Below, piece by piece: positions 42,001-64,000 of a stretch of 64,000 bases of DNA. The translations under genes and the position numbers were made by a program. The notes beneath the pieces were generated by a model. The model saw only the letters and a program-made list of their open reading frames with translations. It was not told the origin of the DNA and did not search any database. Origin of the DNA: Caecitellus pseudoparvulus (lineage: Eukaryota > Protista > Bigyra: Bicosoecida); NCBI GenBank assembly GCA_965644315.1, contig CBFFRQ010000214.1, positions 1-64,000 on the forward strand, read 5' to 3'. Positions within the stretch are counted from its first letter, which is position 1; every line of letters starts with the position of its first letter.

Positions 42001-45000
42001 CAGCAGTGATTGTTGCGTCGGCGAGTTGTGCACCGCCAATGCTGGACAGCTTCAGTAAAGAGGGCGTGCCAACAGCTGGCCCCGCCGCCAAATGTACAAC
42101 TCCGCTAGATTCCACGCCTGCTCCACTTTCAAGGACAAGAGGACCACTAGATTCGCTGTCCCCGCTTGAAAGGGACAATGCACCGGAACCAGAGAGTGCA
42201 TCGCCAGTCGAAACACTAATCCCACCGCTCGAGACCTTGCCCGTGGTAGCTAAACTCATTGATCCTGACTGAAACGCATTCCCAGACCGAATAATCATTC
42301 CGCCACTGGAATTTGTTCCCTTGCCTGACTCTATTCTGAGGGCGCCCCCCAGTGACGACTGCCCCGCTTGAATCGCAACATCACCGGAGACTAAACTCCT
42401 CCCGGAGGAAATAGTGACAGACCCCGAACGGGACACTGCCCGGCCTGCAATGATGCCAATGCCACCTGTTTCATGCCCTGCTCCAGACTTGAGCTGGATA
42501 CCACCACTTCTTAAACCTGATCCGGTTCGAAGGGATGTGCTGCCAGTCTCTGCTGAAGCATCCCCAGAGGCCACCAAAATACCCCCCTTTGCCCCATGCA
42601 GACGACCCGAACGAACAGAAAAATTGCCACTTTGGCTACCTCGACCACTGGCAAGCCGTACTACACCGGACGTTAACAACCCTTCCCCAGATTCAAGTAC
42701 GACATCCCCTCCTTGCTCCATCGACTGACCGGCTGCAACGAGCACGCTACCACTCACGCCCCGACTGGCAGCACTTGACACACTAACGGACCCACTGGCC
42801 CCCGCCTCGGATGGCCCCGTCGTGACGTGCACCTCACCACTTGACACAGGGCCCTGGCCCGACGCCACAGACACCCTGCCACCGGCACCAGATGCGCTGC
42901 TGCCCCCCAACACAGACACACTGCCAGATTGGACACGTGCCAAGCCACTGCCCAGCTGCACTGCACCACTGGCACTGCCAGCGTCACCGCTCATGATGTG
43001 CACCGCGCCTGACTGGCCCCCTCTTGATGTGCCTGACTGCAGATGCAACTGACCGCTCGAGCCGCCCTCCACAGCGCCGCTGCTGACCTCCACACCACCG
43101 CTACCATGGCTGCCAGCTCCCCCCAGCACACTCACACCACCTCCTAGCCCTCCATGAGACCCACCAGCCTGCAGTACGACGGACCCCCCTTCCCCACGGG
43201 CTGCAACACCAGCCTGCAGCACCACGTCGCCACCCGGCCCAGACACTGCACCCCCAGCACGGCCCGTGATGTCCCCTGATGCCCCACTCGCGCTGCTGCC
43301 CGTCGACAACAGTATGCTGCCGCTGTCACCGTCGCTGCCTGACGAGCTCACACGCACGCCACCTGCGCCTGCATGCACGTCCACGGACCCACCAGCACCC
43401 GATGCGACAGACACGGTGCCGCCTTGCGAGCCCCCCCCCGCGGCCACAGTCACATTGCCCCCCGACACTGCACCTTTGCCTGTGCCGACAAACACGTCTC
43501 CAGACACGCCAGTCGCGCTGTCCCCACTGCGCAGAGACACAGACCCGGACGCCTCGCGGCCCTCTCCACTGCGCACTTCCACGCGCCCACCAGTACCTTG
43601 CATAGACTGTCCAGCATACATGAGCAAGTCTCCGCCCGCTTTGTGGGAGCTACCAACGCTTAAAAGGATCCCTCCGCTTTGATCACCCGCTGAGGCCCCT
43701 GTTCGCATGGCGATGCTGCCGCTGCTGGAAGCATCTCCTGTGAGCACCTGAATGCTTCCCGACACAGCACCAGCCTCGCCTGTAGCAAGCCTGACTGATC
43801 CACTGGCGTGCTCAGACTGCTTGGAACTGACACTGATGTTTCCAGTCTGGCTCTCTGTGTTTGGAAGCATGGAGAACCGGCGGCTCCTGGCGTGCAGTGC
43901 TGCAAGCAAATCAATGGTGATCTTTGTCTTGTCAACTTCATGAAAGTTCTTCAAGCTGAAGTTCTTCTCAGGAAGACTCAACTCGGGGTACTCAGAAACG
44001 TACTCAGGCATGACCTCCTGGACCTCTTGCGCAATGACACCTCGAGTCTCGATGTCTTTGATGCCACGAACGCGCTGCCACTCAGGTGTGTACCGATACT
44101 TGGTCACTCGCAGGCGCAGCAAGCGCTGGAGTACATCATCATCATCCACATCTTGGATGTCCGTTTTGATGCGGCGGTCAGAAGGAGAGTACACTTGCAC
44201 GAGGTTGGCTGGAACATGAGACATGATGCGCTCCTTGCCCAAACGAAGAACAGTCCCACCAGTGACATTCGCACCTAGCATTTGCACCTGGATGGACCCA
44301 TTGCTCACTGACAGGTGCACCTGATGGCCAGCATGCATCGACAGGTTGCCGGTGGATGAGATGTTTACCCCACGGCCAAGTGCAAGTGAGGAGGCATGAG
44401 AAGCTGAGGAGGAGGATAACCTGACACTAGCATCCGAGGCAGATGAAGTTGCGGACACAGACACTGACGAAGGACCAGTTTGTGAGTCCGAAACAATACT
44501 CACGTTCGATGAGTCAGGTGCCTGCGCTACAAAACTAAGAAGGCTTTCCTGACTTGACTCAGCGACGACCTGAGTAGTTTCAGCCGACGCAAGCAGTTTC
44601 GAAGACCGAAAATCGACTTCTTGCGAGGCTTTCAGAGCGATCCCATCTCCTGACATCAGTATGGAGCCGCCCAAGGCTTCGCCAGAGGCGGATCTGCCGC
44701 TACGAATGACAACGGATCCACCCCGCCCACCTGCCGAGCTGCCACCCTGCAGAGTGACGTTGCCTGCATCCCCAGCCATGCCCACACCAGACGACACTGT
44801 CACAGACCCACTGCTGCCAGATGCCGACATGGAGCTGCCAAGCAGCAAGTCCCCACTCCGAACACCGCCAGCACCAGTCACAAGCTGCACCCGGCCACTC
44901 GCCTTCCCCCCTGCACCGGATGACACCATCACGGCGCCTCCACTCCCATCCCGACTCATGCCGGCGTGCCATGTGATGGACCCACCCTGCTCCCCCGTGC

Positions 45001-48000
45001 CACCTGCCACAGACACGCTGCCTCCCCGGCTGCCACGCTCAGCCCCGCCGACCAGCCCAGCACGCACCTGCACGTTGCCATGCAGACCCTTGCCGTCACC
45101 AGCCAGCAAGGAGACATTGCCACTCTCTGTGTGCCCTCTGCCCCCTTGCAGCAACAGTGCCCCGCCAACACCTTCGCTGCTGGAGCCGGCCGCCACAGTC
45201 ACGTTGCCACCGACTGCCTTGCCATGGCCAGCCTGCATGGTCAATGAGCCGCCACCACCACCTCGCAAGCCGCCGCTCGCGCCCGCTGCAATGACCACAT
45301 CACCCCCACCAATGCGCACACCAGCAGTGCCAGGTGTAGAGCCACCGCCCACTTCCACCGCAATGCTGCCGCTGACGTCGCCGTCCCCGCTCGACATGTG
45401 CACATGGCCACCTTCTCCGCTCAACACTGCTGATGACCCCCTCGCAAGGTGACACCACCAGAGGATCGGGCCACCAATGACACACCACCCCCGCCCTGGC
45501 CACCGCTCCCGCCTTGCACGGAAACGTTGCCAGCCACGCCAGCAGCAGCGTCCCCGCTCGCCAGCACCACGTCACCCGCAGGCCCATCTGATGCTTGGCC
45601 CGTTCGCAGCACCACAGACCCTGAGCGCTGGCCCTCCCCGCTGCTGACCAGCACAGAGCCGCTGGTGTCTCCGGCCCCACTCCTCACGCTGACGCCTCCC
45701 CCAGTCCCAGCGGTGGCGCTTCCAGCTAGAATGCGAGCATGGCCACCCTGCTTTGTGGCATTACCGGCCACCATTTCAAGCTGACCTGACTGCTGTCCGC
45801 TCCCAGTCACTACGCTGACACTGCCACTATTTGAAGCACGTCCAGACGCCACTTGGATGCTTCCAGATGTGCGCCTAGCCGAGCCCGTCGTAAGCGCCAC
45901 AGAGCCACTGGTGTCCTCTGCACTCAGTCCACTACTGAGCGCTGCAGAGCCGCTCCGGCGCACTGCTTTCCCGCTGTGAAGCTTCACAGGCCCACTCTCC
46001 GCCCCTGGCCCACTTCTGAAGCTAGCCTTACCGGAAGTTCCCATGTCTGATCTGCCAGATTTGAGCAGCACGGTACCTGACCTGACACTGCTGCGCCCAG
46101 TCGACCCATGCAAGTCACCAGAACGGGCAGCCCCGGAGCCTGTAGACACAGCAATCGCACCTGACTCGGCACCATGCCCAGACACGATCTCAACCTTACC
46201 ACTCTCTGATGCAGAGTCACCAGAAGACAGGCTCACTCGGCCGCTGGCCCCGTGACTGCTTGCACCAGTTGCCAGCGATACTTCACCACTCCGGGCCCCG
46301 TCACCTGACTGGATCTCAACACTCCCAGACTCAAACTCTGCAGCCTCAGGGGCAGTCCCACCTGATCCCACAGAAACACCACCTGATGAAGCAGACGTGC
46401 TTCCGGACCTAAGCATCACTGAGCCTGACTTCTCAAGGCCGCGGGTAGCGAGCAGAGTCCCTCCACTCCCGCTGGAGACCGCGACGCTGCCAGCTCTGTC
46501 AGCGGAGATCTCCACCTTTCCGTGGCTAGCATCAGACCCTTCTGCCACGATTTTCACTTGCCCTCCAGACTCTGCTGAACCTGTAGCCATCAATTGTACG
46601 GTCCCAGCTGATGAGCTGCCACCAGTCCCCACCAATATTCTCCCTGCATGGTCGCTCGCGATACCGTCACCCGCGGACAGACGGATATCCCCAGCATCAG
46701 TTGCAGCCCCTGTCACAACCGAAATTCCACCGGAACTTCCATCAGAGGCCGCCGTGTGCACGTCCACACTCCCTGAGCCCAGCGCTCCGGCACCAGACCG
46801 TAGCACAATACCCCCCCCTGACTTCCTGTCGCTGCCGCTGCCGCCCTGCAGAGTCATATTACCGCCTGGCCCCGCCTGGCCTGAACCAGCCAGCACAGTC
46901 ACACTGCCTCCTGACCCCAATGCATCTGTGCTGGCCCCACCCTGCAGAAGAACTGACCCACCACGCTGGCTCCCAGACCCACCAGCAACACGAGCTGCAC
47001 CTCCCTGGAGCCCATTCCCAGCTTCCACAGCGACAGAACCACCTGATCCACCCACACCAGAGCCTGCTGCGATGCTCATCGCTCCACCTTGCACCTCGCT
47101 GTGCCCTGCTTCCAATGACACGGTGCCCCCTGAGCCCTCTTCACTTGGCCCTGCGATCAATGAAATGCCACCGCTTCCAGCGCTGCCGGCGCCTGTTCCA
47201 ATGGTCACATGCCCAGACACAGCCGCAGCAGAATCACCCGTGGTGATGCTGATGGGCCCACTGCTGCGTGTGCTTACTGCACCTGTGGAGACGTACATGC
47301 CACCACTGGGCCCGCTCGAGCTGCTACCGCTGCCCACCACCACCTCACCGCCTTCACCTGCCTCTGACACGCCAGCTCGCATGGTGAGCACCCCGCCGCG
47401 CGCGCCTGCACCGGCTCGCAAAGTCACGTTCCCGCCGATCATGCCGCCCTCGCCAGCTGCCACCCGCACATTCCCAGCCTGCTCTGAGCCCGAACCAGCC
47501 AACACACTGGAGTCGCCACCAGTGCCTGCAGTGCTCTGGCCCCCCACCACTTGCACACTTCCCCCCATGCCCTCCCCTGCACCAGCGGACACGGCCACCG
47601 CTCCACCAGTTCGGCCTTGCCCACCACTCACAGATGCTTGGGCCGTGTGTGCTACAAGGCGCACGTCACCACCTGCCTGGGCGCCCAGGCCAGCTTCAAT
47701 GCGCACAGCGCCTCCACCCCCTGTGCTGCGCCCCGCCGACACAGTCACATTCCCACTTGCTCCTTGAGCTGCATCCCCAGACATCAGAGCCATGGAGCCA
47801 CTGCTGCCCGCAGATGCCAACCCAGTCTCAATGGTCACGTTGCCTGAAGTGAGACCGGGGCCACTGCGCAGCGTCAGGCTCCCCCCTGAGTGCCCGTGCC
47901 CACCCACGATCTGCACGTCACCCCCAGCGCCCTGCCCATCACCTGCACTGGCAATGACAGAGCCACCGACCGAGCCAGATCCTGCCAACAAGCTAGCGCC

Positions 48001-51000
48001 TCCGCCATGCTCATCAGCACCATCTCCGCCAGACAGCTGCATCTCGCCACCTGCACCGAGTGATGCCGATCCAGCCAGCAGTGCGACACCCCCACCCTGC
48101 AGGGCCCCGCTCCCACTCTCCATCACGACGTCCCCGCCATGCTTGCCTCCGGCGACAGAGCCTGCCTTGATGGCCACTGAACCGCCAGATCCGCCCTCCA
48201 CGCTGCGGCCTGCGCTCACTGCCACTGGCCCAGCACCGTCACGCCCAGCGCCAGAGCCCAGCACCACAGACCCGGACGTCCCCAAACGAGAGGCACCACT
48301 CACCACAGACACGTTCCCAGACCCCAATGCCCCCATTCCACTGGAGAGGAACACGCCCCCACTGGAGCCCGACGATGCCTCACCACTGCCCACCTGAACG
48401 GACCCTGACGATGCACCGCCGGAGCCAGACACGACACTCAGCGTGCCAGATGCACCCTGGGCGCTGCGCCCACTTGCCAACATGAGAGCACCACCTGTCG
48501 CGTGGCCAGCTGCATGGCCGGCCGACACAGCCACTGAACCGCCTGCACCTGCCAGGCTGCCCCCACCAACCACCTGCACCTGGCCTGCATCACCGCTTGA
48601 ACTATCACCACTGCCCATGCGCACGCTACCACTCACACCCCGACTGGCAGCACTTGACACACTAACGGACCCACTGGCCCCCGCCTCGGATGGCCCCGTC
48701 GTGACGTGCACCTCACCACTTGACACAGGGCCCTGGCCCGACGCCACAGACACCCTGCCACCGGCACCAGATGCGCTGCTGCCCCCCAACACAGACACAC
48801 TGCCAGATTGGACACGTGCCAAGCCACTGCCCAGCTGCACTGCACCACTGGCACTGCCAGCGTCACCGCTCATGATGTGCACCGCGCCTGACTGGCCCCC
48901 TCTTGATGTGCCTGACTGCAGATGCAACTGACCGCTCGAGCCGCCCTCCACAGCGCCGCTGCTGACCTCCACACCACCGCTACCATGGCTGCCAGCTCCC
49001 CCCAGCACACTCACACCACCTCCTAGCCCTCCATGAGACCCACCAGCCTGCAGTACGACGGACCCCCTTCCCCACGGGCTGCAACACCAGCCTGCAGCAC
49101 CACGTCGCCACCCGGCCCAGACACTGCACCCCCAGCATGGCCCGTGATGTCCCCTGATGCCCCACTCGCGCTGCTGCCCGTCGACAACAGTATGCTGCCG
49201 CTGTCACCGTCGCTGCCTGACGAGCTCACACGCACGCCACCTGCGCCTGCATGCACGTCCACGGACCCACCAGCACCCGATGCGACAGACACGGTGCCAC
49301 CTTGCGAGCCCCCCCCCGCGGCCACAGTCACATTGCCCCCCGACACTGCACCTTTGCCTGTGCCGACAAACACGTCTCCAGACACGCCAGTCGCGCTGTC
49401 CCCACTGCGCAGAGACACAGACCCGGACGCCTCGCGGCCCTCTCCACTGCGCACTTCCACGCGCCCACCAGTACCTTGCATAGACTGTCCAGCATACATG
49501 AGCAAGTCTCCGCCCGCTTTGTGGGAGCTACCAACGCTTAAAAGGATCCCTCCGCTTTGATCGCCCGCTGAGGCCCCTGTTCGCATGGCGATGCTGCCGC
49601 TGCTGGAAGCATCTCCTGTGAGCACCTGAATGCTTCCCGACACAGCACCAGCCTTGCCTGTAGCAAGCCTGACTGATCCACTAGCGTGCTCAGACTGCTT
49701 CGAACTGACACTGATGTTTCCAGTCTGGCTCTCTGTGTTTGGAAGCATGGAGAACCGGCGGCTCCTGGCGTGCAGTGCTGCAAGCAAATCAATGGTGATC
49801 TTTGTCTTGTCAACTTCATGAAAGTTCTTCAAGCTGAAGTTCTTCTCAGGAAGACTCAACTCGGGGTACTCAGAAACGTACTCAGGCATGACCTCCTGGA
49901 CCTCTTGCGCAATGACACCTCGAGTCTCGATGTCTTTGATGCCACGAACGCGCTGCCACTCAGGTGTGTACTGATACTTGGTCACTCGCAGGCGCAGCAA
50001 GCGCTGGAGTACATCATCATCATCCACATCTTGGATGTCCGTTTTGATGCGGCGGTCAGAAGGAGAGTACACTTGCACGAGGTTGGCTGGAACATGAGAC
50101 ATGATGCGCTCCTTGCCCAAACGAAGAACAGTCCCACCCGTGACATTGGCACTTGAAATGCTGACATCGAATCCAGCCTGAGAGCTAAATGTAGATGAAG
50201 CGGCATGTGTTCTCAAAAGCCCAGAGGTGGATAGTGATGCTCCTAATTCAGACACAGATAGTACTGATGATTCGGACCGCGACTGGCTGCGCGCAACAAG
50301 CTGGACAGAACCACCAGGACCGTTAGACGAGACTGATATTCTCGAAGACTCTTGCCATGGTTCCCCTGCTGCAATGCTCACGTCGCCTCCACGCCCGACG
50401 CCGTCGCCAGCATGAAGCACCACGCTTCCACCATCATTGCCACGCCCAGCCACAAGTGCCAACTTGCTACCTACGCCCTCTGCCGTGGATGAGCTCAGCA
50501 GCTCAATCCCTGTGCCACTCTCATGCTCGCCAGATGCAGCTGCCACGACCACACCATGCCCTGCCAGGCCCAGCTGTGCTCCAGCAGTCACCGACACGCC
50601 ACCCGCGCCGCCGACTACCTGCACGCCCCCGCCTTCACCACTGCTTGACTCCCCACCAGCAATCAACACCGAACCGCTGCCCACAGCAGCACCACTGCCG
50701 CCCATCAAGCTCACAGACCCGCCCCGCCCACCTGCCGAGCTGCCACCCTGCAGAGTGACGTTGCCTGCATCCCCAGCCATGCCCACACCAGACGACACTG
50801 TCACAGACCCACTGCTGCCAGATGCCGACATGGAGCTGCCAAGCAGCAAGTCCCCACTCCGAACACCGCCAGCACCAGTCACAAGCTGCACCCGGCCACT
50901 CGCCTTCCCCCCTGCACCGGATGACACCATCACGGCGCCTCCACTCCCATCCCGACTCATGCCGGCGTGCCATGTGATGGACCCACCCTGCTCCCCCGTG

Positions 51001-54000
51001 CCACCTGCCACAGACACGCTGCCTCCCCGGCTGTCACGCTCAGCCCCGCCGACCAGCCCAGCACGCACCTGCACGTTGCCATGCAGACCCTTGCCGTCAC
51101 CAGCCAGCAAGGAGACATTGCCACTCTCTGTGTGCCCTCTGCCCCCTTGCAGCAACAGTGCCCCGCCAACACCTTCGCTGCTGGAGCCGGCCGCCACAGT
51201 CACGTTGCCACCGACTGCCTTGCCATGGCCAGCCTGCATGGTCAATGAGCCGCCACCACCACCTCGCAAGCCGCCGCTCGCACCCGCTGCAATGACCACA
51301 TCACCCCCACCAATGCGCACACCAGCAGTGCCAGGTGTAGAGCCACCGCCCACTTCCACCGCAATGCTGCCGCTGACGTCGCCGTCCCCGCTCGACATGT
51401 GCACATGGCCACCTTCTCCGCTCAACACTGCTGATGACCCCCCTCGCAAGGTGACACCACCAGAGGATCGGGCCACCAATGACACACCACCCCCGCCCTG
51501 GCCACCGCTCCCGCCTTGCACGGAAACGTTGCCAGCCACGCCAGCAGCAGCGTCCCCGCTCGCCAGCACCACGTCACCCGCAGGCCCATCTGATGCTTGG
51601 CCCGTTCGCAGCACCACAGACCCTGAGCGCTGGCCCTCCCCGCTGCTGACCAGCACAGAGCCACTGGTGTCTCCGGCCCCACTCCTCACGCTGACGCCTC
51701 CCCCAGTCCCAGCGGTGGCGCTTCCAGCTAGAATGCGAGCATGGCCACCCTGCTTTGTGGCATTACCGGCCACCATTTCAAGCTGACCTGACTGCTGTCC
51801 GCTCCCAGTCACTACGCTGACACTGCCACTATTTGAAGCACGTCCAGACGCCACTTGGATGCTTCCAGATGTGCGCCTAGCCGAGCCCGTCGTAAGCGCC
51901 ACAGAGCCACTGGTGTCCTCTGCACTCAGTCCACTACTGAGCGCTGCAGAGCCGCTCCGGCGCACTGCTTTCCCGCTGTGAAGCTTCACAGGCCCACTCT
52001 CTGCCCCTGGCCCACTTCTGAAGCTAGCCTTACCGGAAGTTCCCATGTCTGATCTGCCAGATTTGAGCAGCACGGTACCTGACTTGACACTGCTGCGCCC
52101 AGTCGACCCATGCAAGTCACCTGAACGGGCAGCCCCGGAGCCTGTAGACACAGCAATCGCACCTGACTCGGCACCATGCCCAGACACGATCTCAACCTTA
52201 CCACTCTCTGATGCTGCGTCACCAGAAGACAGGCTCACTCGGCCGCTGGCCCCGTGACTGCTTGCACCAGTTGCCAGCGATACTTCACCACTCCGGGCCC
52301 CGTCACCTGACTGGATCTCAACACTCCCAGACTCAAACTCTGCAGCATCAGGGGCAGCCCCACCTGATCCCACAGAAACACCACCTGATGAAGCAGACGT
52401 GCTTCCGGACCTAAGCATCACTGAGCCTGACTTCTCAAGGCCGCGGGTAGCGAGCAGAGTACCTCCACTCCCGCTGGAGACCGCGACGCCGCCAGCTCTG
52501 TCAGCGGAGATCTCCACCTTTCCGTGGCTAGCATCAGACCCTTCTGCCACGATTTTCACTTGCCCTCCAGACTCTGCTGAACCTGTAGCCATCAATTGTA
52601 CGGTCCCAGCTGATGAGCTGCCACCAGTCCCCACCAATATTCTCCCTGCATGGTTGCTCGCGATACCGTCACCCGCGGACAGACGGATATCCCCAGCATC
52701 AGTTGCAGCCCCTGTCACAACCGAAATTCCACCGGAACTTCCATCAGAGGCCGCCGTGTGCACGTCCACACTCCCTGAGCCCAGCGCTCCGGCACCAGAC
52801 CGTAGCACAATACCCCCCCCTGACTTCCTGTCGCTGCCGCTGCCGCCCTGCAGAGTCATATTACCGCCTGGCCCCGCCTGGCCTGAACCAGCCAGCACAG
52901 TCACACTGCCTCCTGACCCCAATGCATCTGCGCTGGCCCCACCCTGCAGAAGAACTGACCCACCACGCTGGCTCCCAGACCCACCAGCAACACGAGCTGC
53001 ACCTCCCTGGAGCCCATTCCCAGCTTCCACAGCGACAGAACCACCTGATCCACCCACACCAGAGCCTGCTGCGATGCTCATCGCTCCACCTTGCACCTCG
53101 CTGTGCCCTGCTTCCAATGACACGGTGCCCCCTGAGCCCTCTTCACTTGGCCCTGCGATCACTGAAATGCCACCGCTTCCAGCGCTGCCGGCGCCTGTTC
53201 CAATGGTCACATGCCCAGACACAGCCGCAGCAGAATCACCCGTGGTGATGCTGATGGGCCCACTGCTGCGTGTGCTTACTGCACCTGTGGAGACGTACAT
53301 GCCACCACTGGGCCCGCTCGAGCTGCTACCGCTGCCCACCACCACCTCACCGCCTTCACCTGCCTCTGACACGCCAGCTCGCATGGTGAGCACCCCGCCG
53401 CGCGCGCCTGCACCGGCTCGCAAAGTCACGTTCCCGCCGATCATGCCGCCCTCGCCAGCTGCCACCCGCACATTCCCAGCCTGCTCTGAGCCCGAACCAG
53501 CCAACACACTGGAGTCGCCACCAGTGCTTGCAGTGCTCTGGCCCCCCACCACTTGCACACTTCCCCCCATGCCCTCCCCTGCACCAGCGGACACGGCCAC
53601 CGCTCCACCAGTTCGGCCTTGCCCACCACTCACAGATGCTTGGGCCGTGTGTGCTACAAGGCGCACGTCACCACCTGCCTGGGCGCCCAGGCCAGCTTCA
53701 ATGCGCACAGCGCCTCCACCCCCTGTGCTGCGCCCCACCGACACAGTCACATTCCCACTTGCTCCTTGAGCTGCATCCCCAGACATCAGAGCCATGGAGC
53801 CACTGCTGCCCGCAGATGCCAACCCAGTCTCAATGGTCACGTTGCCTGAAGTGAGACCGGGGCCACTGCGCAGCGTCAGGCTCCCCCCTGAGTGCCCGTG
53901 CCCACCCACGATCTGCACGTCACCCCCAGCGCCCTGCCCATCACCTGCACTGGCAATGACAGAGCCACCGACCGAGCCAGATCCTGCCAACAAGCTAGCG

Positions 54001-57000
54001 CCTCCGCCATGCTCATCAGCACCATCTCCGCCAGACAGCTGCATCTCGCCACCTGCACCGAGTGATGCCGATCCAGCCAGCAGTGCGACACCCCCACCCT
54101 GCAGGGCCCCGCTCCCACTCTCCATCACGACGTCCCCGCCATGCTTGCCTCCGGCGACAGAGCCTGCCTTGATGGCCACTGAACCGCCAGATCCGCCCTC
54201 CACGCTGCGGCCTGCGCTCACTGCCACTGGCCCAGCACCGTCACGCCCAGCGCCAGAGCCCAGCACCACAGACCCGGACGTCCCCAAACGAGAGGCACCA
54301 CTCACCACAGACACGTTCCCAGACCCCAATGCCCCCATTCCACTGGAGAGGAACACGCCCCCACTGGAGCCCGACGATGCCTCACCACTGCCCACCTGAA
54401 CGGACCCTGACGATGCACCGCCGGAGCCAGACACGACACTCAGCGTGCCAGATGCACCCTGGGCGCTGCGCCCACTTGCCATCATGAGAGCACCACCTGT
54501 CGCGTGGCCAGCTGCATGGCCGGCCGACACAGCCACTGAACCGCCTGCACCTGCCAGGCTGCCCCCACCAACCACCTGCACCTGGCCTGCATCACCGCTT
54601 GAACTATCACCACTGCCCACGAGCACGCTACCACTCACGCCCCGACTGGCAGCACTTGACACACTAACGGACCCACTGGCCCCCGCCTCGGATGGCCCCG
54701 TCGTGACGTGCACCTCACCACTTGACACAGGGCCCTGGCCCGACGCCACAGACACCCTGCCACCGGCACCAGATGCGCTGCTGCCCCCCAACACAGACAC
54801 ACTGCCAGATTGGACACGTGCCAAGCCACTGCCCAGCTGCACTGCACCACTGGCACTGCCAGCGTCACCGCTCATGATGTGCACCGCGCCTGACTGACCC
54901 CCTCTTGATGTGCCTGACTGCAGATGCAACTGACCACTCGAGCCGCCCTCCACAGCGCCGCTGCTGACCTCCACACCACCGCTACCATGGCTGCCAGCTC
55001 CCCCCAGCACACTCACACCACCTCCTAGCCCTCCATGAGACCCACCAGCCTGCAGTACGACGGACCCCCCTTCCCCACGGGCTGCAACACCAGCCTGCAG
55101 CACCACGTCGCCACCCGGCCCAGACACTGCACCCCCAGCATGGCCCGTGATGTCCCCTGATGCCCCACTCGCGCTGCTGCCCGTCGACAACAGTATGCTG
55201 CCGCTGTCACCGTCGCTGCCTGACGAGCTCACACGCACGCCACCTGCGCCTGCATGCACGTCCACGGACCCACCAGCACCCGATGCGACAGACACGGTGC
55301 CGCCTTGCGAGCCCCCCCCCGCGGCCACAGTCACATTGCCCCCCGACACTGCACCTTTGCCTGTGCCGACAAACACGTCTCCAGACACGCCAGTCGCGCT
55401 GTCCCCACTGCGCAGAGACACAGACCCGGACGCTTCGCGGCCCTCTCCACTGCGCACTTCCACGCGCCCACCAGTACCACCAGCGCCCCCTCCGAGGAGG
55501 ACTGCACCGCCGGTCCCATTCACCGACACACCTGCCTGCACGACCACGGACCCGCCCTCTCCTGTCTCGGATGCACCGGCACTCACCCGCACTGAGCCAC
55601 TGGACCCCTGGCGTGCAGATCCGCTGCGCACCGTCACAGACCCAGTGTTCCCAGATACTGCCGCGCCGCTCTGCACCAGCACAGCACCACTTGATGTGCT
55701 GCCTGCTCCATCTTGACTCGACACACGCACGCTGCCTGAGGCGTGCGCGGACTCGGGGCCCTCGTAAAAGCGTTCTTGGCGCGCCTGCATCGCAGCCAGC
55801 ACGTCCACTGACAACGATGCGTAGTCAATGCCTGGCACAAGAGAACCGTTCAAGCCTGGTACCATGCGCACGTGCTCTGGAAGTGCTGCTTGCACATCCT
55901 CAGCCGACAGCACATGATCTGCACCTGGTCCACCCTGGCGTACCTTGAGCTGCATCAAGCGACCCAACACTTCCCGCTTCTCCTCTGCTGTCACAGTTGG
56001 CGCATCAGCGATGCCCGTCGGCACTCGCTGCAGTAGGCGCTTCACTGTCATGTCTCCCTGCACTGTCATGCCATCAGCAGTCAGCTTCAGAGCTGGTGCG
56101 CCGCCAACATTGACACTGACACCTTCACCCCCACTTTGCACAGTCAACGCACCGGTCGACTCCACACTCACGTTCCCTGCAGACTCCAGCGAAATGCCTG
56201 ACGCACTCAGTGCCACCGAGCTGCCCCCACCCACAACGGACACTTCATGCCCTTGCACAGCTACACCCCCTTGTGGACCCTCGCTTGATCTCCCTGCTGC
56301 AATGCTCACGTCGCCTCCACGCCCGACGCCGTCGCCAGCATGAAGCACCACGCTTCCACCATCATTGCCACGCCCAGCCACAAGTGCCAACTTGCTACCT
56401 ACGCCCTCTGCCGTGGATGAGCTCAGCAGCTCAATCCCTGTGCCACTCTCATGCTCGCCAGATGCAGCTGCCACGACCACACCATGCCCTGCCAGGCCCA
56501 GCTGTGCTCCAGCAGTCACCGACACGCCACCCGCGCCGCCGACTACCTGCACGCCCCCGCCTTCACCACTGCTTGACTCCCCACCAGCAATCAACACCGA
56601 ACCGCTGCCCACAGCAGCACCACTGCCGCCCATCAAGCTCACAGACCCGCCCCGCCCACCTGCCGAGCTGCCACCCTGCAGAGTGACGTTGCCTGCATCC
56701 CCAGCCATGCCCACACCAGACGACACTGTCACAGACCCACTGCTGCCAGATGCCGACATGGAGCTGCCAAGCAGCAAGTCCCCACTCCGAACACCGCCAG
56801 CACCAGTCACAAGCTGCACCCGGCCACTCGCCTTCCCCCCTGCACCGGATGACACCATCACGGCGCCTCCACTCCCATCCCGACTCATGCCGGCGTGCCA
56901 TGTGATGGACCCACCCTGCTCCCCCGTGCCACCTGCCACAGACACGCTGCCTCCCCGGCTGCCACGCTCAGCCCCGCCGACCAGCCCAGCACGCACCTGC

Positions 57001-60000
57001 ACGGTGCCATGCAGACCCTTGCCGTCACCAGCCAGCAAGGAGACATTGCCACTCTGTGTGTGCCCTCTGCCCCCTTGCAGCAACAGTGCCCCGCCAACAC
57101 CTTCGCTGCTGGAGCCGGCCGCCACAGTCACGTTGCCACCGACTGCCTTGCCATGGCCAGCCTGCATGGTCAATGAGCCGCCACCACCACCTCGCAAGCC
57201 GCCGCTCGCACCCGCTGCAATGACCACATCACCCCCACCAATGCGCACACCAGCAGTGCCAGGTGTAGAGCCACCGCCCACTTCCACCGCAATGCTGCCG
57301 CTGACGTCGCCGTCCCCGCTCGACATGTGCACATGGCCACCCTCTCCGCTCAACACTGCTGATGACCCCCCTCGCAAGGTGACACCACCAGAGGATCGGG
57401 CCACCAATGACACACCACCCCCGCCCTGGCCACCGCTCCCGCCTTGCACGGAAACGTTGCCAGCCACGCCAGCAGCAGCGTCCCCGCTCGCCAGCACCAC
57501 GTCACCCGCAGGCCCATCTGATGCTTGGCCCGTTCGCAGCACCACAGACCCTGAGCGCTGGCCCTCCCCGCTGCTGACCAGCACAGAGCCGCTGGTGTCC
57601 CCGGCCCCACTCCTCACGCTGACGCCTCCCCCAGTCCCAGCAGTTGCATCACCAGCGTGCAGCGAAATGGTTCCAGATCTCTGCTCGCCTTTTCCAGTTG
57701 ACAGTGAAAGATTTCCAGACTGTTGACCTTGACCGGTTTCTATTTTGACAAGGCCGGATGCTGCTCCTTTGCCTGTCTGCATCATGATGTCACCAGAGGT
57801 TTGATTCGAGTTACCGGTCCCAAGTGAAAGGTTTCCACTTCTGCGAATTCCAAAACCTGTGTGAACATTCATGTCACCACTTTCTATTCCCTCTCCTGTC
57901 AGAAGCAAAATTGCTCCTGTCTTTTCCCCTGCTGTTCCAGTCGCAACGTAGACCATGCCAGTTTCATACCCTTCCCCGGATTTAAGTGATACACCTCCAG
58001 AGGAACTGAGAGCACTGCCACTTGCGACAGAAACTGACCCCGACACAATGCTTTTACCTGAGGAGACTGAAACGTTTCCACTCCGAAGGCCGGCCGAGCC
58101 ACTTGACACTGCAATTGACCCTCCTTGATCTCCTCCATGACCTCCAGACACGAGAATATCTCCGGCAGACGATTCTCCATTCCCGGTCTTCAGTGTCAGA
58201 TCTCCACTTTGGGCCGCGTCTCCTGTCATTGCCATAATTGAGCCAGAATTCGCCTCTGCGTTCGCGGTTTGAAGAAGCACGCCGATGAAGTCTGCTGGAG
58301 ATGTACCACTTACAGACTTGAAGGCACCAGAAGTCATCTTTATACTATGACCCACAACTCTTATATCCGACATGTCGGCATAGGACCCAATGCTAACATT
58401 GCCACCGCTTTCACTACCAGCACCAGCGTGCAAAAGAACACTCCCACCTGATGTTCCTGAACCAGCCAAAATATGCACACCCCCGCCACTTTGTGTTGAG
58501 AAACCACTCTCAACGCGCACATCACCAGACTGCTCCACTGACGCACCTGACCCAAGAGTCACAGAGCCAGATGCACTGCTTGACTTCCCCGTCTGCAGCA
58601 GAATGTCACCTGAGCGTGCTTCCGCGTTCCCCGTCCCAAGCTTCAAGCTCCCTGACATTCCATCAGAGGCCGCCGTGTGCACGTCCACACTCCCTGAGCC
58701 CAGCGCTCCGGCACCAGACCGTAGCACAATACCCCCCCCTGACTTCCTGTCGCTGCCGCTGCCGCCCTGCAGAGTCATATTACCGCCTGGCCCCGCCTGG
58801 CCTGAACCAGCCAGCACAGTCACACTGCCTCCTGACCCCAATGCATCTGTGCTGGCCCCACCCTGCAGAAGAACTGACCCACCACGCTGGCTCCCAGACC
58901 CACCAGCAACACGAGCTGCACCTCCCTGGAGCCCATTCCCAGCTTCCACAGCGACAGAACCACCTGATCCACCCACACCAGAGCCTGCTGCGATGCTCAT
59001 CGCTCCACCTTGCACCTCGCTGTGCCCTGCTTCCAATGACACGGTGCCCCCTGAGCCCTCTTCACTTGGCCCTGCGATCAATGAAATGCCACCGCTTCCA
59101 GCGCTGCCGGCGCCTGTTCCAATGGTCACATGCCCAGACACAGCCGCAGCAGAATCACCCGTGGTGATGCTGATGGGCCCACTGCTGCGTGTGCTTACTG
59201 CACCTGTGGAGACGTACATGCCACCACTGGGCCCGCTCGAGCTGCTACCGCTGCCCACCACCACCTCACCGCCTTCACCTGCCTCTGACACGCCAGCTCG
59301 CATGGTGAGCACCCCGCCGCGCGCGCCTGCACCGGCTCGCAAAGTCACGTTCCCGCCGATCATGCCGCCCTCGCCAGCTGCCACCCGCACATTCCCAGCC
59401 TGCTCTGAGCCCGAACCAGCCAACACACTGGAGTCGCCACCAGTGCCTGCAGTGCTCTGGCCCCCCACCACTTGCACACTTCCCCCCATGCCCTCCCCTG
59501 CACCAGCGGACACGGCCACCGCTCCACCAGTTCGGCCTTGCCCACCACTCACAGATGCTTGGGCCGTGTGTGCTACAAGGCGCACGTCACCACCTGCCTG
59601 GGCGCCCAGGCCAGCTTCAATGCGCACAGCGCCTCCACCCCCTGTGCTGCGCCCCGCCGACACAGTCACATTCCCACTTGCTCCTTGAGCTGCATCCCCA
59701 GACATCAGAGCCATGGAGCCACTGCTGCCCGCAGATGCCAACCCAGTCTCAATGGTCACGTTGCCTGAAGTGAGACCGGGGCCACTGCGCAGCGTCAGGC
59801 TCCCCCCTGAGTGCCCGTGCCCACCCACGATCTGCACGTCACCCCCAGCGCCCTGCCCATCACCTGCACTGGCAATGACAGAGCCACCGACCGAGCCAGA
59901 TCCTGCCAACAAGCTAGCGCCTCCGCCATGCTCATCAGCACCATCTCCGCCAGACAGCTGCATCTCGCCACCTGCACCGAGTGATGCCGATCCAGCCAGC

Positions 60001-63000
60001 AGTGCGACACCCCCACCCTGCAGGGCCCCGCTCCCACTCTCCATCACGACGTCCCCGCCATGCTTGCCTCCGGCGACAGAGCCTGCCTTGATGGCCACTG
60101 AACCGCCAGATCCGCCCTCCACGCTGCGGCCTGCGCTCACTGCCACTGGCCCAGCACCGTCACGCCCAGCGCCAGAGCCCAGCACCACAGACCCGGACGT
60201 CCCCAAACGAGAGGCACCACTCACCACAGACACGTTCCCAGACCCCAATGCCCCCATTCCACTGGAGAGGAACACGCCCCCACTGGAGCCCGACGATGCC
60301 TCACCACTGCCCACCTGAACGGACCCTGACGATGCACCGCCGGAGCCAGACACGACACTCAGCGTGCCAGATGCACCCTGGGCGCTGCGCCCACTTGCCA
60401 ACATGAGAGCACCACCTGTCGCGTGGCCAGCTGCATGGCCGGCCGACACAGCCACTGAACCGCCTGCACCTGCCAGGCTGCCCCCACCAACCACCTGCAC
60501 CTGGCCTGCATCACCGCTTGAACTATCACCACTGCCCATGCGCACGCTACCACTCACACCCCGACTGGCAGCACTTGACACACTAACGGACCCACTGGCC
60601 CCCGCCTCGGATGGCCCCGTCGTGACGTGCACCTCACCACTTGACACAGGGCCCTGGCCCGACGCCACAGACACCCTGCCACCGGCACCAGATGCGCTGC
60701 TGCCCCCCAACACAGACACACTGCCAGACTGAACACGTGCCGAGCCACTGCCCAGCTGCACTGCACCACTGGCACTGCCAGCGTCACCGCTCATGATGTG
60801 CACCGCGCCTGACTGACCCCCTCTTGATGTGCCTGACTGCAGATGCAACTGACCGCTCGAGCCGCCCTCCACAGCGCCGCTGCTGACCTCCACACCACCG
60901 CTACCATGGCTGCCAGCTCCCCCCAGCACACTCACACCACCTCCTAGCCCTCCATGAGACCCACCAGCCTGCAGTACGACGGACCCCCCTTCCCCACGGG
61001 CTGCAACACCAGCCTGCAGCACCACGTCGCCACCCGGCCCAGACACTGCACCCCCAGCATGGCCCGTGATGTCCCCTGATGCCCCACTCGCGCTGCTGCC
61101 CGTCGACAACAGTATGCTGCCGCTGTCACCGTCGCTGCCTGACGAGCTCACACGCACGCCACCTGCGCCTGCATGCACGTCCACGGACCCACCAGCACCC
61201 GATGCGACAGACACGGTGCCACCTTGCGAGCCCCCCCCCGCGGCCACAGTCACATTGCCCCCCGACACTGCACCTTTGCCTGTGCCGACAAACACGTCTC
61301 CAGACACGCCAGTCGCGCTGTCCCCACTGCGCAGAGACACAGACCCGGACGCCTCGCGGCCCTCTCCACTGCGCACTTCCACGCGCCCACCAGTACCACC
61401 AGCGCCCCCTCCGAGGAGGACTGCACCGCCGGTCCCATTCACCGACACACCTGCCTGCACGACCACGGACCCGCCCTCTCCTGTCTCGGATGCACCGGCA
61501 CTCACCCGCACTGAGCCACTGGACCCCTGGCGTGCAGATCCGCTGCGCACCGTCACAGACCCAGTGTTCCCAGATACTGCCGCGCCGCTCTGCACCAGCA
61601 CAGCACCACTTGATGTGCTGCCTGCTCCATCTTGACTCGACACACGCACGCTGCCTGAGGCGTGCGCGGACTCGGGGCCCTCGTAAAAGCGTTCTTGGCG
61701 CGCCTGCATCGCAGCCAGCACGTCCACTGACAACGATGCGTAGTCAATGCCTGGCACAAGAGAACCGTTCAAGCCTGGTACCATGCGCACGTGCTCTGGA
61801 AGTGCTGCTTGCACATCCTCAGCCGACAGCACATGATCTGCACCTGGTCCACCCTGGCGTACCTTGAGCTGCATCAAGCGACCCAACACTTCCCGCTTCT
61901 CCTCTGCTGTCACAGTTGGCGCATCAGCGATGCCCGTCGGCACTCGCTGCAGTAGGCGCTTCACTGTCATGTCTCCCTGCACTGTCATGCCATCAGCAGT
62001 CAGCTTCAGAGCTGGTGCGCCGCCAACATTGACACTGACACCTTCACCCCCACTTTGCACAGTCAACGCACCGGTCGACTCCACACTCACGTTCCCTGCA
62101 GACTCCAGCGAAATGCCTGACGCACTCAGTGCCACCGAGCTGCCCCCACCCACAACGGACACTTCATGCCCTTGCACAGCTACACCCCCTTGTGGACCCT
62201 CGCTTGATCTCCCTGCTGCAATGCTCACGTCGCCTCCACGCCCGACGCCGTCGCCAGCATGAAGCACCACGCTTCCACCATCATTGCCACGCCCAGCCAC
62301 AAGTGCCAACTTGCTACCTACGCCCTCTGCCGTGGATGAGCTCAGCAGCTCAATCCCTGTGCCACTCTCATGCTCGCCAGATGCAGCTGCCACGACCACA
62401 CCATGCCCTGCCAGGCCCAGCTGTGCTCCAGCAGTCACCGACACGCCACCCGCGCCGCCGACTACCTGCACGCCCCCGCCTTCACCACTGCTTGACTCCC
62501 CACCAGCAATCAACACCGAACCGCTGCCCACAGCAGCACCACTGCCGCCCATCAAGCTCACAGACCCGCCCCGCCCACCTGCCGAGCTGCCACCCTGCAG
62601 AGTGACGTTGCCTGCATCCCCAGCCATGCCCACACCAGACGACACTGTCACAGACCCACTGCTGCCAGATGCCGACATGGAGCTGCCAAGCAGCAAGTCC
62701 CCACTCCGAACACCGCCAGCACCAGTCACAAGCTGCACCCGGCCACTCGCCTTCCCCCCTGCACCGGATGACACCATCACGGCGCCTCCACTCCCATCCC
62801 GACTCATGCCGGCGTGCCATGTGATGGACCCACCCTGCTCCCCCGTGCCACCTGCCACAGACACGCTGCCTCCCCGGCTGCCACGCTCAGCCCCGCCGAC
62901 CAGCCCAGCACGCACCTGCACGTTGCCATGCAGACCCTTGCCGTCACCAGCCAGCAAGGAGACATTGCCACTCTCTGTGTGCCCTCTGCCCCCTTGCAGC

Positions 63001-64000: not shown

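What the first reader, a model, noticed from the sequence alone, without database searches (positions are those of the whole stretch)
42738..63552. Candidate new system: giant fibre polyprotein with periodically spaced internal S74/ICA chaperone-autoprotease domains
Seen: four S74-like domains sit inside one reading frame at ~5.9-6.0-kb (~2,000-aa) intervals, each flanked on both sides by long beta-repeat tracts. Established: in phage tailspikes and tail fibres (e.g. K1F endosialidase) Peptidase_S74 is a single C-terminal domain that trimerises, folds the upstream triple beta-helix and cleaves itself off through a Ser-Lys dyad; in MYRF it is a single internal domain. Inference: here the domain is reused as a repeated folding/registration node along a giant homotrimeric beta-helical fibre. 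The two intact copies would cut the precursor before Ser at 50060 and 44182 into pieces of >4,600, ~1,960 and >14,700 aa. I do not know of a characterised protein with this architecture.
Basis: partly seen in the sequence, partly recalled or inferred. Interest (0 to 1): 0.93.

Follow-up and report, generated by a model that had tools for sequence, protein, structure and literature searches.

The report
Giant fibre gene with repeated S74
The whole window is part of one enormous gene, probably from an oomycete-like protist, for a glycine/serine-rich repeat protein. It carries four copies of the self-cleaving "S74" folding domain known from phage tail fibres and the animal factor MYRF, a layout that no paper I could find has described.

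Summary
Exactly four S74-like sites lie on the minus strand about 5.9-6.0 kb apart. Two are bona fide Peptidase_S74/ICA domains: Pfam E about 1e-15, an intact Ser-x4-Lys dyad, and a predicted fold that best matches the MYRF ICA crystal structure. The other two are divergent (31% identity), lack the dyad and fail Pfam.

Three corrections apply.
- As assembled, the four are not in one reading frame. Two single-base frameshifts fall inside the span, both in 6-base homopolymer runs.
- The regular spacing comes from a very recent 3.5-fold tandem duplication (99.2-99.8% DNA identity). There are therefore only two domain types, each present twice.
- The gene fills the whole 64-kb window (more than 21,000 codons) and reaches neither end.

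The closest named relatives are uncharacterised oomycete proteins from Phytophthora, Nothophytophthora and Aphanomyces (at most 53% identity). Three unnamed database proteins carry two or three diverged internal S74 domains about 365-390 residues apart, some with Ser replaced by Ala or Asp. The multi-S74 design is therefore conserved rather than an assembly artefact.

Trimer formation, cleavage and cellular role remain inferred. I rate it a new variant of a known kind, interest about 0.6.

The parts
1..64000 (-). One giant gene for a Gly/Ser-rich repeat protein. It runs off both ends of the window (more than 21,000 codons). As assembled it is broken by frameshifts only: two inside the finding's span and at least two more in the tandem array near the low-coordinate end. 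There are no in-frame stops otherwise.
   Evidence: Open-frame analysis; translations; frameshifts are 1-base differences in homopolymer runs; three 1-base gaps in the lowest 4.3 kb against other array units; no transmembrane-like segment and almost no Cys.
42738..63559 (-). Block of about 3.5 tandem macro-repeats of 5.9-6.0 kb: roughly 63559-57641, 57640-51714, 51713-45711 and a partial copy 45710-42738. It is mosaic: the shared flanks are 99.2-99.8% identical, but the S74 cassettes are of two types.
   Evidence: Self-BLAST. Copies differ by 22 synonymous and 25 non-synonymous changes, dN/dS about 0.44, p 0.005 against neutrality.
49728..50093 (-). Intact S74/ICA domain, copy A1. The Pfam core is 49875-50060, and the dyad Ser codon starts at 50060 with Lys five residues on.
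   Evidence: Pfam PF13884 E 1.2e-15 / 6e-17; family HMM E 4e-51; PDB sequence hit 7DC3 MYRF ICA E 1.2e-12; AF2 pLDDT above 90 and Foldseek 7dc3 TM 0.72.
43850..44215 (-). Intact S74/ICA domain, copy A2. The Pfam core is 43997-44182, and the dyad Ser codon starts at 44182.
   Evidence: Pfam E 8e-15; family HMM E 9e-51; 93% identical to A1 over 148 aa.
61671..62057 (-). Divergent S74-like domain, copy B1. It has no Ser and no Lys at the dyad positions and a shorter core.
   Evidence: Alignment; no Pfam hit; family HMM hits only the C-terminal half at E 0.036.
55752..56138 (-). Divergent S74-like domain, copy B2, identical in protein sequence to B1 over the aligned part.
   Evidence: blastp to A1 31%, E 8e-10; hhalign to the family profile, probability 99%, starting after the dyad motif; AF2 model best matches 7dc3 but weakly, E 8.7e-4, TM 0.50.
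34107..42737 (-). Non-duplicated part of the same protein: 14-residue Gly/Ser beta-type repeats interrupted by Ser/Thr/Ala-rich spacer stretches. It contains no S74. GC 55%, GC3 0.43.
   Evidence: Translation; periodicity; family HMM negative; composition.
1..34106 (-). Tandem array of about 75 units of 459 or 369 nt (153 or 123 aa, built from 30-aa sub-repeats). Units are about 99% identical. GC 71%, GC3 0.81. It continues the same reading frame and motif style.
   Evidence: Tandem Repeats Finder; 69 regularly spaced units in the main frame; composition.

Best explanation
The window is an internal slice of one giant, intron-less cellular gene of a stramenopile-type protist. The closest named relatives are oomycetes.

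The gene encodes a fibre-like protein built almost entirely of 14-15-residue Gly/Ser/Ala/Val beta-type repeats. A recently triplicated 6-kb segment in its upstream third contains four S74/ICA-type modules.

By analogy with phage fibre chaperone domains and MYRF, each module would bring three chains into register and nucleate folding of the repeat tract on its N-terminal side. The two modules that keep the Ser-x4-Lys dyad would then cut the chain just before the Ser. The two that have lost the dyad would stay in the chain as permanent trimer clamps. The product would be a set of very long trimeric fibre pieces, with a surface or extracellular role inferred.

Shown: domain identity, dyad presence or absence, fold similarity, repeat anatomy, conservation of the multi-S74 layout in relatives, and purifying selection on the copies.

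Inferred: trimerisation, cleavage, location and role. The frameshifts are also inferred, most likely, to be long-read consensus errors.
For: - S74 identity: Pfam; PDB sequence match to MYRF ICA; AF2 plus Foldseek giving 7dc3, 3gud, 4uw8 and 3gw6; 306 phage-fibre structure matches; PHROG tail-fibre profiles hit at their C-terminal ends.
- Dyad: present in the A copies and absent in the B copies.
- Site count: exactly four sites in the window.
- Conserved design: P0001 and P0157 (78% identical, from different contigs) each have three S74 cores, and P0002 has two. Spacing is 365-390 aa, copies are 44-64% identical, and Ser is kept in some and Ala or Asp in others.
- Coding status: 14,013 stop-free codons, including 2,666 in unique 55% GC sequence. 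dN/dS between copies is about 0.44, p 0.005.
- Frameshifts: both lie in 6-base homopolymer runs.
- Taxonomy: the named relatives are Phytophthora infestans, Nothophytophthora, Aphanomyces astaci and A. euteiches. There is no close match in 185,579 prokaryote genomes or in viral contigs.
Against: - The frame is broken at least four times in the window as assembled, so the locus could be a pseudogene.
- The four-copy count and 6-kb spacing rest on a 99%-identical repeat block that only long reads can resolve.
- The repeat tracts have no detectable relative in Pfam, NCBIfam, PHROGs or PDB. They were modelled at pLDDT 40-70, so their fold and oligomeric state are unknown.
- GC3 differs strongly between parts of the one gene (0.43, 0.58, 0.81).
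- Neither end of the gene is in the window, so no signal peptide, anchor or promoter could be checked.
- The B-copy fold match is weak and leans on an alignment made mostly of A-type sequences.
- The organism is not identified; the best named identity is only 53%.
Confidence: 0.55

Rival explanations
1. Partly an assembly artefact. The S74 domain and the repeat gene are real, but the number and order of 6-kb macro-repeats (and of 459-nt units) are mis-estimated, and the frameshifts are consensus errors. In that case 'four periodically spaced domains' overstates what is in the genome.
For: Copies are 99.2-99.8% identical over up to 4.9 kb. About 34 kb of 99%-identical tandem units adjoin the block. 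Both frameshifts in the span sit in 6-base homopolymers, a typical long-read error signature.
Against: The copies differ by 47 substitutions with an excess of synonymous changes, and they are mosaic with two different S74 cassettes. A simple collapse or expansion error would not produce that. Relatives independently show several S74 domains per protein.
Confidence: 0.17
2. A decaying or non-functional locus. It would be a former fibre gene that has expanded like a satellite and is now a pseudogene, so the S74 domains do nothing.
For: At least four frameshifts in 64 kb. There is extreme recent amplification with odd GC3 (0.81) in the array. Two of the four S74 copies have lost the catalytic residues.
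Against: There is not a single in-frame stop in more than 21,000 codons apart from the frameshifts, including 8 kb of unique 55% GC sequence. dN/dS is about 0.44. Dyad-less S74 copies are conserved between relatives that are 78% identical, which argues they are functional variants rather than decay.
Confidence: 0.15
3. A fibre gene of an endogenous virus or virus-like element (polinton-like virus or giant virus) resident in a protist genome.
For: Polinton-like viruses of protists commonly encode modular fibre proteins of up to 3.9k aa with an S74 domain (PMC12220804). S74 is overwhelmingly a viral fibre domain.
Against: This single gene exceeds 64 kb, larger than a whole polinton-like virus (14-40 kb per PMC12220804). 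The window holds no other gene. Viral contigs give only distant core matches, 30-52% over about 65 residues. In those viral fibres S74 is single and C-terminal.
Confidence: 0.05

Closest known systems
MYRF intramolecular chaperone auto-processing (ICA) domain (PDB 7DC3)
   Same: It is the best sequence match (E 1.2e-12) and the best fold match (TM 0.72, rmsd 2.2 A, 30% identity). The domain is internal with sequence downstream, and it has the Ser-x4-Lys dyad motif.
   Different: MYRF has one ICA domain, an NDT80-type DNA-binding domain upstream, the PF13887 extension and a transmembrane helix downstream. None of these is found here. Here the domain occurs four times among beta-type repeats.
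C-terminal intramolecular chaperone domains of phage tailspikes and fibres (endosialidase 3GW6, GA-1 neck appendage 3GUD, T5 L-shaped fibre 4UW8)
   Same: Same Pfam family PF13884 and same fold class. The domain follows a long repetitive fibre-like tract.
   Different: In phages the domain is single and at the extreme C-terminus (PHROG profile positions) and is discarded after cleavage. Here each copy is followed by thousands of residues, two copies lack the dyad, and the host is a eukaryote.
Uncharacterised oomycete 'Peptidase S74 domain-containing proteins' (for example Phytophthora infestans PITG_01491 / XP_002908152.1, Aphanomyces astaci RLN75429.1) and the unnamed multi-S74 proteins P0001, P0157 and P0002
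   Same: They are the closest sequence relatives (41-53% identity over 150-170 residues) and have the same Gly/Ser repeat flanks. P0001, P0157 and P0002 have 2-3 internal S74 domains with mixed Ser, Ala or Asp at the nucleophile position.
   Different: The database models are fragments of 390-2,100 aa. Their nodes lie 365-390 aa apart and are anciently diverged. Here the nodes lie about 1,960-2,000 aa apart in near-identical recent copies. None of these proteins has been studied.
Fibre proteins of polinton-like viruses in protists (PMC12220804)
   Same: They are large modular eukaryote-associated proteins carrying S74.
   Different: They have a single, usually C-terminal S74, laminin-G or collagen-type modules, and reach at most 3.9k aa. 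Here no such modules are found and there is no viral context.

Membership tests
Peptidase_S74 / ICA domain (Pfam PF13884, MEROPS S74) | Sequence match above the curated Pfam threshold | tested here: met
   Copies A1 and A2 score 57.9-62.1 and 55.3 bits against a cut-off of 22. Copies B1 and B2 have no hit even at E 10, so the feature is met for two of the four.
Peptidase_S74 / ICA domain (Pfam PF13884, MEROPS S74) | Catalytic Ser and Lys five residues apart | tested here: met
   Both residues are present in A1 and A2 and absent in B1 and B2. 112 of 160 aligned relatives' domains have Ser and Lys.
Peptidase_S74 / ICA domain (Pfam PF13884, MEROPS S74) | Fold like solved ICA or CIMCD structures | tested here: met
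   For the A copy the core has pLDDT above 90, and the top PDB matches are 7dc3, 3gud, 4uw8 and 3gw6. For the B copy the top match is the same but weak (E 8.7e-4, TM 0.50) and the model depends on its alignment, so it is inconclusive for B.
Peptidase_S74 / ICA domain (Pfam PF13884, MEROPS S74) | Trimer-dependent self-cleavage before the Ser | not testable with these tools
   No multimer prediction and no protein data were available.
Phage tail fibre / tailspike | Single C-terminal S74 after a receptor-binding or enzymatic fibre, in a viral genome context | tested here: not met
   There are four internal copies. The repeat tracts hit no PHROG family. The window holds no other gene, and viral contigs give only distant matches.
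MYRF-type membrane-bound transcription factor | NDT80 DNA-binding domain, PF13887 extension, and a transmembrane segment after the ICA domain | tested here: not met
   No NDT80 or PF13887 hit. No 19-residue hydrophobic segment typical of a membrane helix.
Trimeric autotransporter-type 14-residue beta-roll (YadA-like head) | Sequence match to head, neck or anchor families | tested here: not met
   The 14-15-residue period is similar, but there are no Pfam or NCBIfam hits. The resemblance is recalled from knowledge only.
Eukaryotic multi-S74 Gly/Ser repeat proteins (unnamed group: P0001, P0157, P0002 and oomycete fragments) | Gly/Ser 14-15-residue repeats with two or more internal S74 domains of mixed catalytic status | tested here: met
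   The group is defined here and is not a curated family.

The most novel reading that the evidence does not exclude
Some protists build extremely long trimeric fibres from a single precursor of more than 21,000 residues. Phage-derived S74/ICA modules would be used many times as in-chain registration nodes. Catalytically live nodes would cut the precursor into defined fibre segments, and dead nodes would remain as clamps. This would be a polyprotein-style assembly route for a cellular structure. The group could also be the missing cellular link between phage fibre chaperones and the MYRF ICA domain.
Probability: 0.25. Interest if true: 0.8.

Novelty: new variant of a known kind. Interest (0 to 1): 0.6.

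Why it matters
S74/ICA domains are known as a single C-terminal folding aid of viral fibres and as the single self-cleaving switch of MYRF. A cellular protein that strings several of them along a giant repeat fibre, mixing live and dead copies, would show a new use of the module: in-chain registration of very long trimers, with programmed fragmentation.

It would also point to an unstudied structural protein family in oomycetes, a group that includes major plant and animal pathogens. These domains match MYRF more closely than they match phage proteins, so the family also bears on how the ICA domain entered eukaryotes.

The locus shows as well that ordinary gene models in older assemblies (390-2,100 aa fragments) hide genes of this size.

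Tried and rejected
- **Giant relatives.** A word-indexed search for relatives of 2,700-8,700 aa around the S74 region found none. The same index with the 201-aa piece gave only four fragments.
- **Prokaryote genomes.** Two distant hits at 32-39%, so a bacterial origin was rejected.
- **Viral and metagenome contigs.** Only distant S74 cores.
- **Repeat tracts.** Pfam, NCBIfam, PHROGs and PDB sequence searches all found nothing.
- **MYRF extension.** The Pfam MYRF_ICA (PF13887) profile did not match.
- **Encoding contigs.** The contigs of P0001 and P0157, and the source of the window, could therefore not be examined.
- **Literature.** Seven searches found no paper on multi-S74 proteins or on S74 in oomycete cellular genes (and the read).
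- **Plus-strand ORFs.** The long plus-strand ORFs over the array (up to 6,065 aa) were rejected as coding. They are a by-product of a stop-free GC-rich unit, whereas the minus-strand frame continues the upstream protein and its motif.
- **Frames.** All searches used single-frame pieces.
Full report
**1. What is in the window**

All 64 kb is coding on the minus strand. Stop-free stretches of 4,991, 1,260 and 14,013 codons follow one another in three different frames, with short overlaps. Further stretches follow at the low-coordinate end, and the first and last stretches run off the window. The translations are one continuous kind of protein, rich in Gly, Ser, Ala and Val (G 19-26%, S 17-21%). 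It has almost no Cys and no membrane-helix-like segment.

Hydrophobic residues recur every 14-15 positions with a period-2 alternation, as in beta-strand repeats.

The window has three compositional parts:
- 1-34106 is an array of about 75 tandem units of 459 or 369 nt, about 99% identical, with GC 71% and GC3 0.81.
- 34107-42737 is unique sequence with GC 55% and GC3 0.43.
- 42738-63559 is a block of macro-repeats with GC about 63% and GC3 0.58.

**2. Checking the observation**

Pfam PF13884 (Peptidase_S74) hits two places, at E 1.2e-15 and 8e-15.

A profile of the domain core, built from 50 relatives, was run against every open segment of all six frames. It finds these two sites (E about 1e-50), two weak sites at 61823-61671 and 55904-55752 (E 0.036, C-terminal half only), and nothing else. 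A shared motif gives spacings of 5919, 5958 and 5878 nt. So four S74-like sites at 5.9-6.0-kb intervals is correct.

The two weak (B) copies are identical to each other. They are 31-34% identical to the intact (A) copies (blastp E 8e-10). They match the family profile with hhalign probability 99%, but only from the first helix onward. They lack both the Ser and the Lys and have no Pfam hit even at E 10.

**3.

(a) The four sites are not in one frame as assembled. Inside the finding's span the frame changes twice. Aligned with the paralogous copy that is open throughout, the stretch shows exactly two gaps. Each is one base long, falls where the frame changes, and lies in a 6-base homopolymer run. 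This is the usual signature of long-read consensus error, but real slippage mutations look the same. The array near the low-coordinate end has at least two more frame changes, with three 1-base gaps against other units. Apart from these frameshifts there is no in-frame stop.

(b) The periodicity is a by-product of recent duplication. The block 42738-63559 is about 3.5 tandem copies of a 5.9-6.0-kb unit at 99.2-99.8% DNA identity. It is mosaic in that otherwise near-identical flanks carry either the A or the B cassette. In effect there are two domain types, each present twice, in the order B, B, A, A along the protein.

(c) The gene is far larger than the finding's span, and the 42 kb downstream of the last S74 has no further copy.

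**4. Is it a real gene?**

The 8.6 kb of unique, 55% GC sequence is stop-free in one frame only.

The macro-repeat copies differ by 47 substitutions, 22 synonymous and 25 non-synonymous. About 28% synonymous would be expected under neutrality. This gives dN/dS of about 0.44 and p = 0.005. That argues for real, selected paralogous copies rather than random sequencing noise or dead DNA.

**5. Identity of the domains**

The A copy's best solved relative by sequence is the MYRF ICA domain (7DC3, E 1.2e-12).

An AlphaFold2 model of 315 residues around A1, built with a 51-sequence alignment, has pLDDT above 90 over the domain. It is low (40-70) over the upstream repeats. Foldseek against the PDB returns the following:
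- 7DC3 first (E 1.4e-8, TM 0.72, rmsd 2.2 A over 115 columns);
- then the phage intramolecular chaperones 3GUD, 4UW8 and 3GW6.

Against predicted viral structures there are 306 matches at E of 0.001 or better, mostly phage tail fibres. PHROG tail-fibre profiles are hit at their C-terminal ends.

The B-copy model also ranks 7DC3 first, but weakly (E 8.7e-4, TM 0.50). Its alignment consisted mainly of A-type sequences, so the model leans that way.

The repeat tracts match nothing in Pfam, NCBIfam, PHROGs or PDB sequences.

**6. Relatives and source**

A full HMMER scan of 1.84 billion representative proteins with 201 residues around A1 gave 771 hits. The best are 41-53% identical, and most are short fragments.

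Those that carry names are oomycete proteins labelled hypothetical or 'Peptidase S74 domain-containing':
- Phytophthora infestans PITG_01491
- Nothophytophthora sp.
- Aphanomyces astaci
- A. euteiches

Others come from marine and freshwater metagenomes. Two short contigs binned as archaea are probably mis-binned. MYRF proteins appear at about 35-38% identity.

Prokaryote genomes, viral contigs and metagenome contigs gave only distant S74 cores. The source is therefore most likely an oomycete or a related stramenopile. This is an inference; the organism itself is not identified.

**7. The multi-S74 layout is conserved**

P0001 (1,767 aa) and P0157 (2,114 aa) are 78% identical to each other and come from a different contig each. 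Each has three S74 cores. P0002 (920 aa) has two.

The cores lie 365-390 residues apart among the same Gly/Ser repeats and are only 44-64% identical to each other. The nucleophile position reads S, A, D in P0001, S, S, A in P0157 and S, A in P0002, while the Lys is kept throughout.

So repeated internal S74 domains, with a mixture of live and Ser-less copies, is an old and maintained feature of this protein group.

**8. Most likely mechanism**

Established knowledge of the family (phage endosialidase and fibre chaperone domains; MYRF) is that the domain trimerises. It promotes folding of the trimeric beta-structure on its N-terminal side. It then cleaves before the Ser using the Ser-Lys dyad.

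Applied here, each module would register three chains and nucleate the upstream tract. The A copies would then cut, leaving the domain at the N-terminus of the next piece, as in MYRF's C-terminal fragment. The B copies, and the Ala or Asp copies in relatives, would remain as uncleaved clamps.

Trimerisation, cleavage, fibre shape, cellular location and role are all inferred. I commit to this reading at about 0.55.

The rivals are a partial assembly artefact (0.17), a pseudogene or satellite-like decay (0.15) and an endogenous viral fibre gene (0.05). For the last, the single gene is larger than a whole polinton-like virus, whose fibres carry a single C-terminal S74 (PMC12220804).

**9. Novelty**

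No paper in the held library describes several S74/ICA domains in one protein, or S74 in oomycete cellular genes. Absence from that library is weak evidence.

The domain, its internal use (MYRF) and its association with fibres are all known. The repeated, mixed live/dead use inside a giant eukaryotic repeat protein is a new variant.

- the regular spacing is trivial;
- the frame is broken as assembled;
- copy number depends on a hard-to-assemble repeat;
- uncharacterised relatives with the same layout already sit in public databases.

**10. Limits and self-check**

I judged this to be a cellular gene, not a virus-like element or a toxin or effector gene. However, the outputs and my first notebook entry list open-frame bounds that bracket the frame changes. 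I note this here and have deleted nothing.

Noticed in passing
window 1-34106: The array holds about 75 near-identical (99%) tandem units of 459 or 369 nt, built from 90-nt (30-aa) sub-repeats. The long and short units alternate in a higher-order pattern. GC3 is 0.81 here, against 0.43 in the adjoining unique part of the same gene.
   Followed up: partly
window 3663-34193, plus strand: Very long antisense open frames (6,065, 2,362 and 1,714 aa) run over the array. They are most likely a by-product of a stop-free GC-rich repeat unit rather than genes.
   Followed up: partly
window 34107-42737, minus strand: Three or four Ser/Thr/Ala/Gln-rich, Gly-poor spacer stretches interrupt the 14-residue repeats. 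They resemble the stretch just upstream of each S74 domain, but no S74 follows them. They could be nodes that lost the domain or a different structural element.
   Followed up: no
window 1-4300: There are further frame changes in the array at the low-coordinate end: at least two, with three 1-base gaps against other units. Homopolymer context was not examined there.
   Followed up: partly
relatives P0089 and P0024 (RYE85057.1, RYG63291.1): Two close relatives with Gly/Ser repeats are labelled 'tail fiber domain-containing protein' from archaeal MAGs on contigs of 3-3.5 kb. They are probably eukaryotic contigs mis-binned into archaeal genomes.
   Followed up: no
relatives P0107 and about 20 further hits: MYRF proteins are the next-best full-length hits (35-38% identity, E about 1e-11), ahead of the phage and bacterial S74 proteins found in the locus scans. 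These protist fibre proteins may be the closest non-MYRF relatives of the MYRF ICA domain.
   Followed up: no
window 57642-58657 versus 51714-52738 and 45711-46736: One roughly 1-kb segment of the first macro-repeat copy has no strong DNA match to the equivalent segment of copies 2 and 3. The repeats are therefore mosaic rather than simple duplicates.
   Followed up: no
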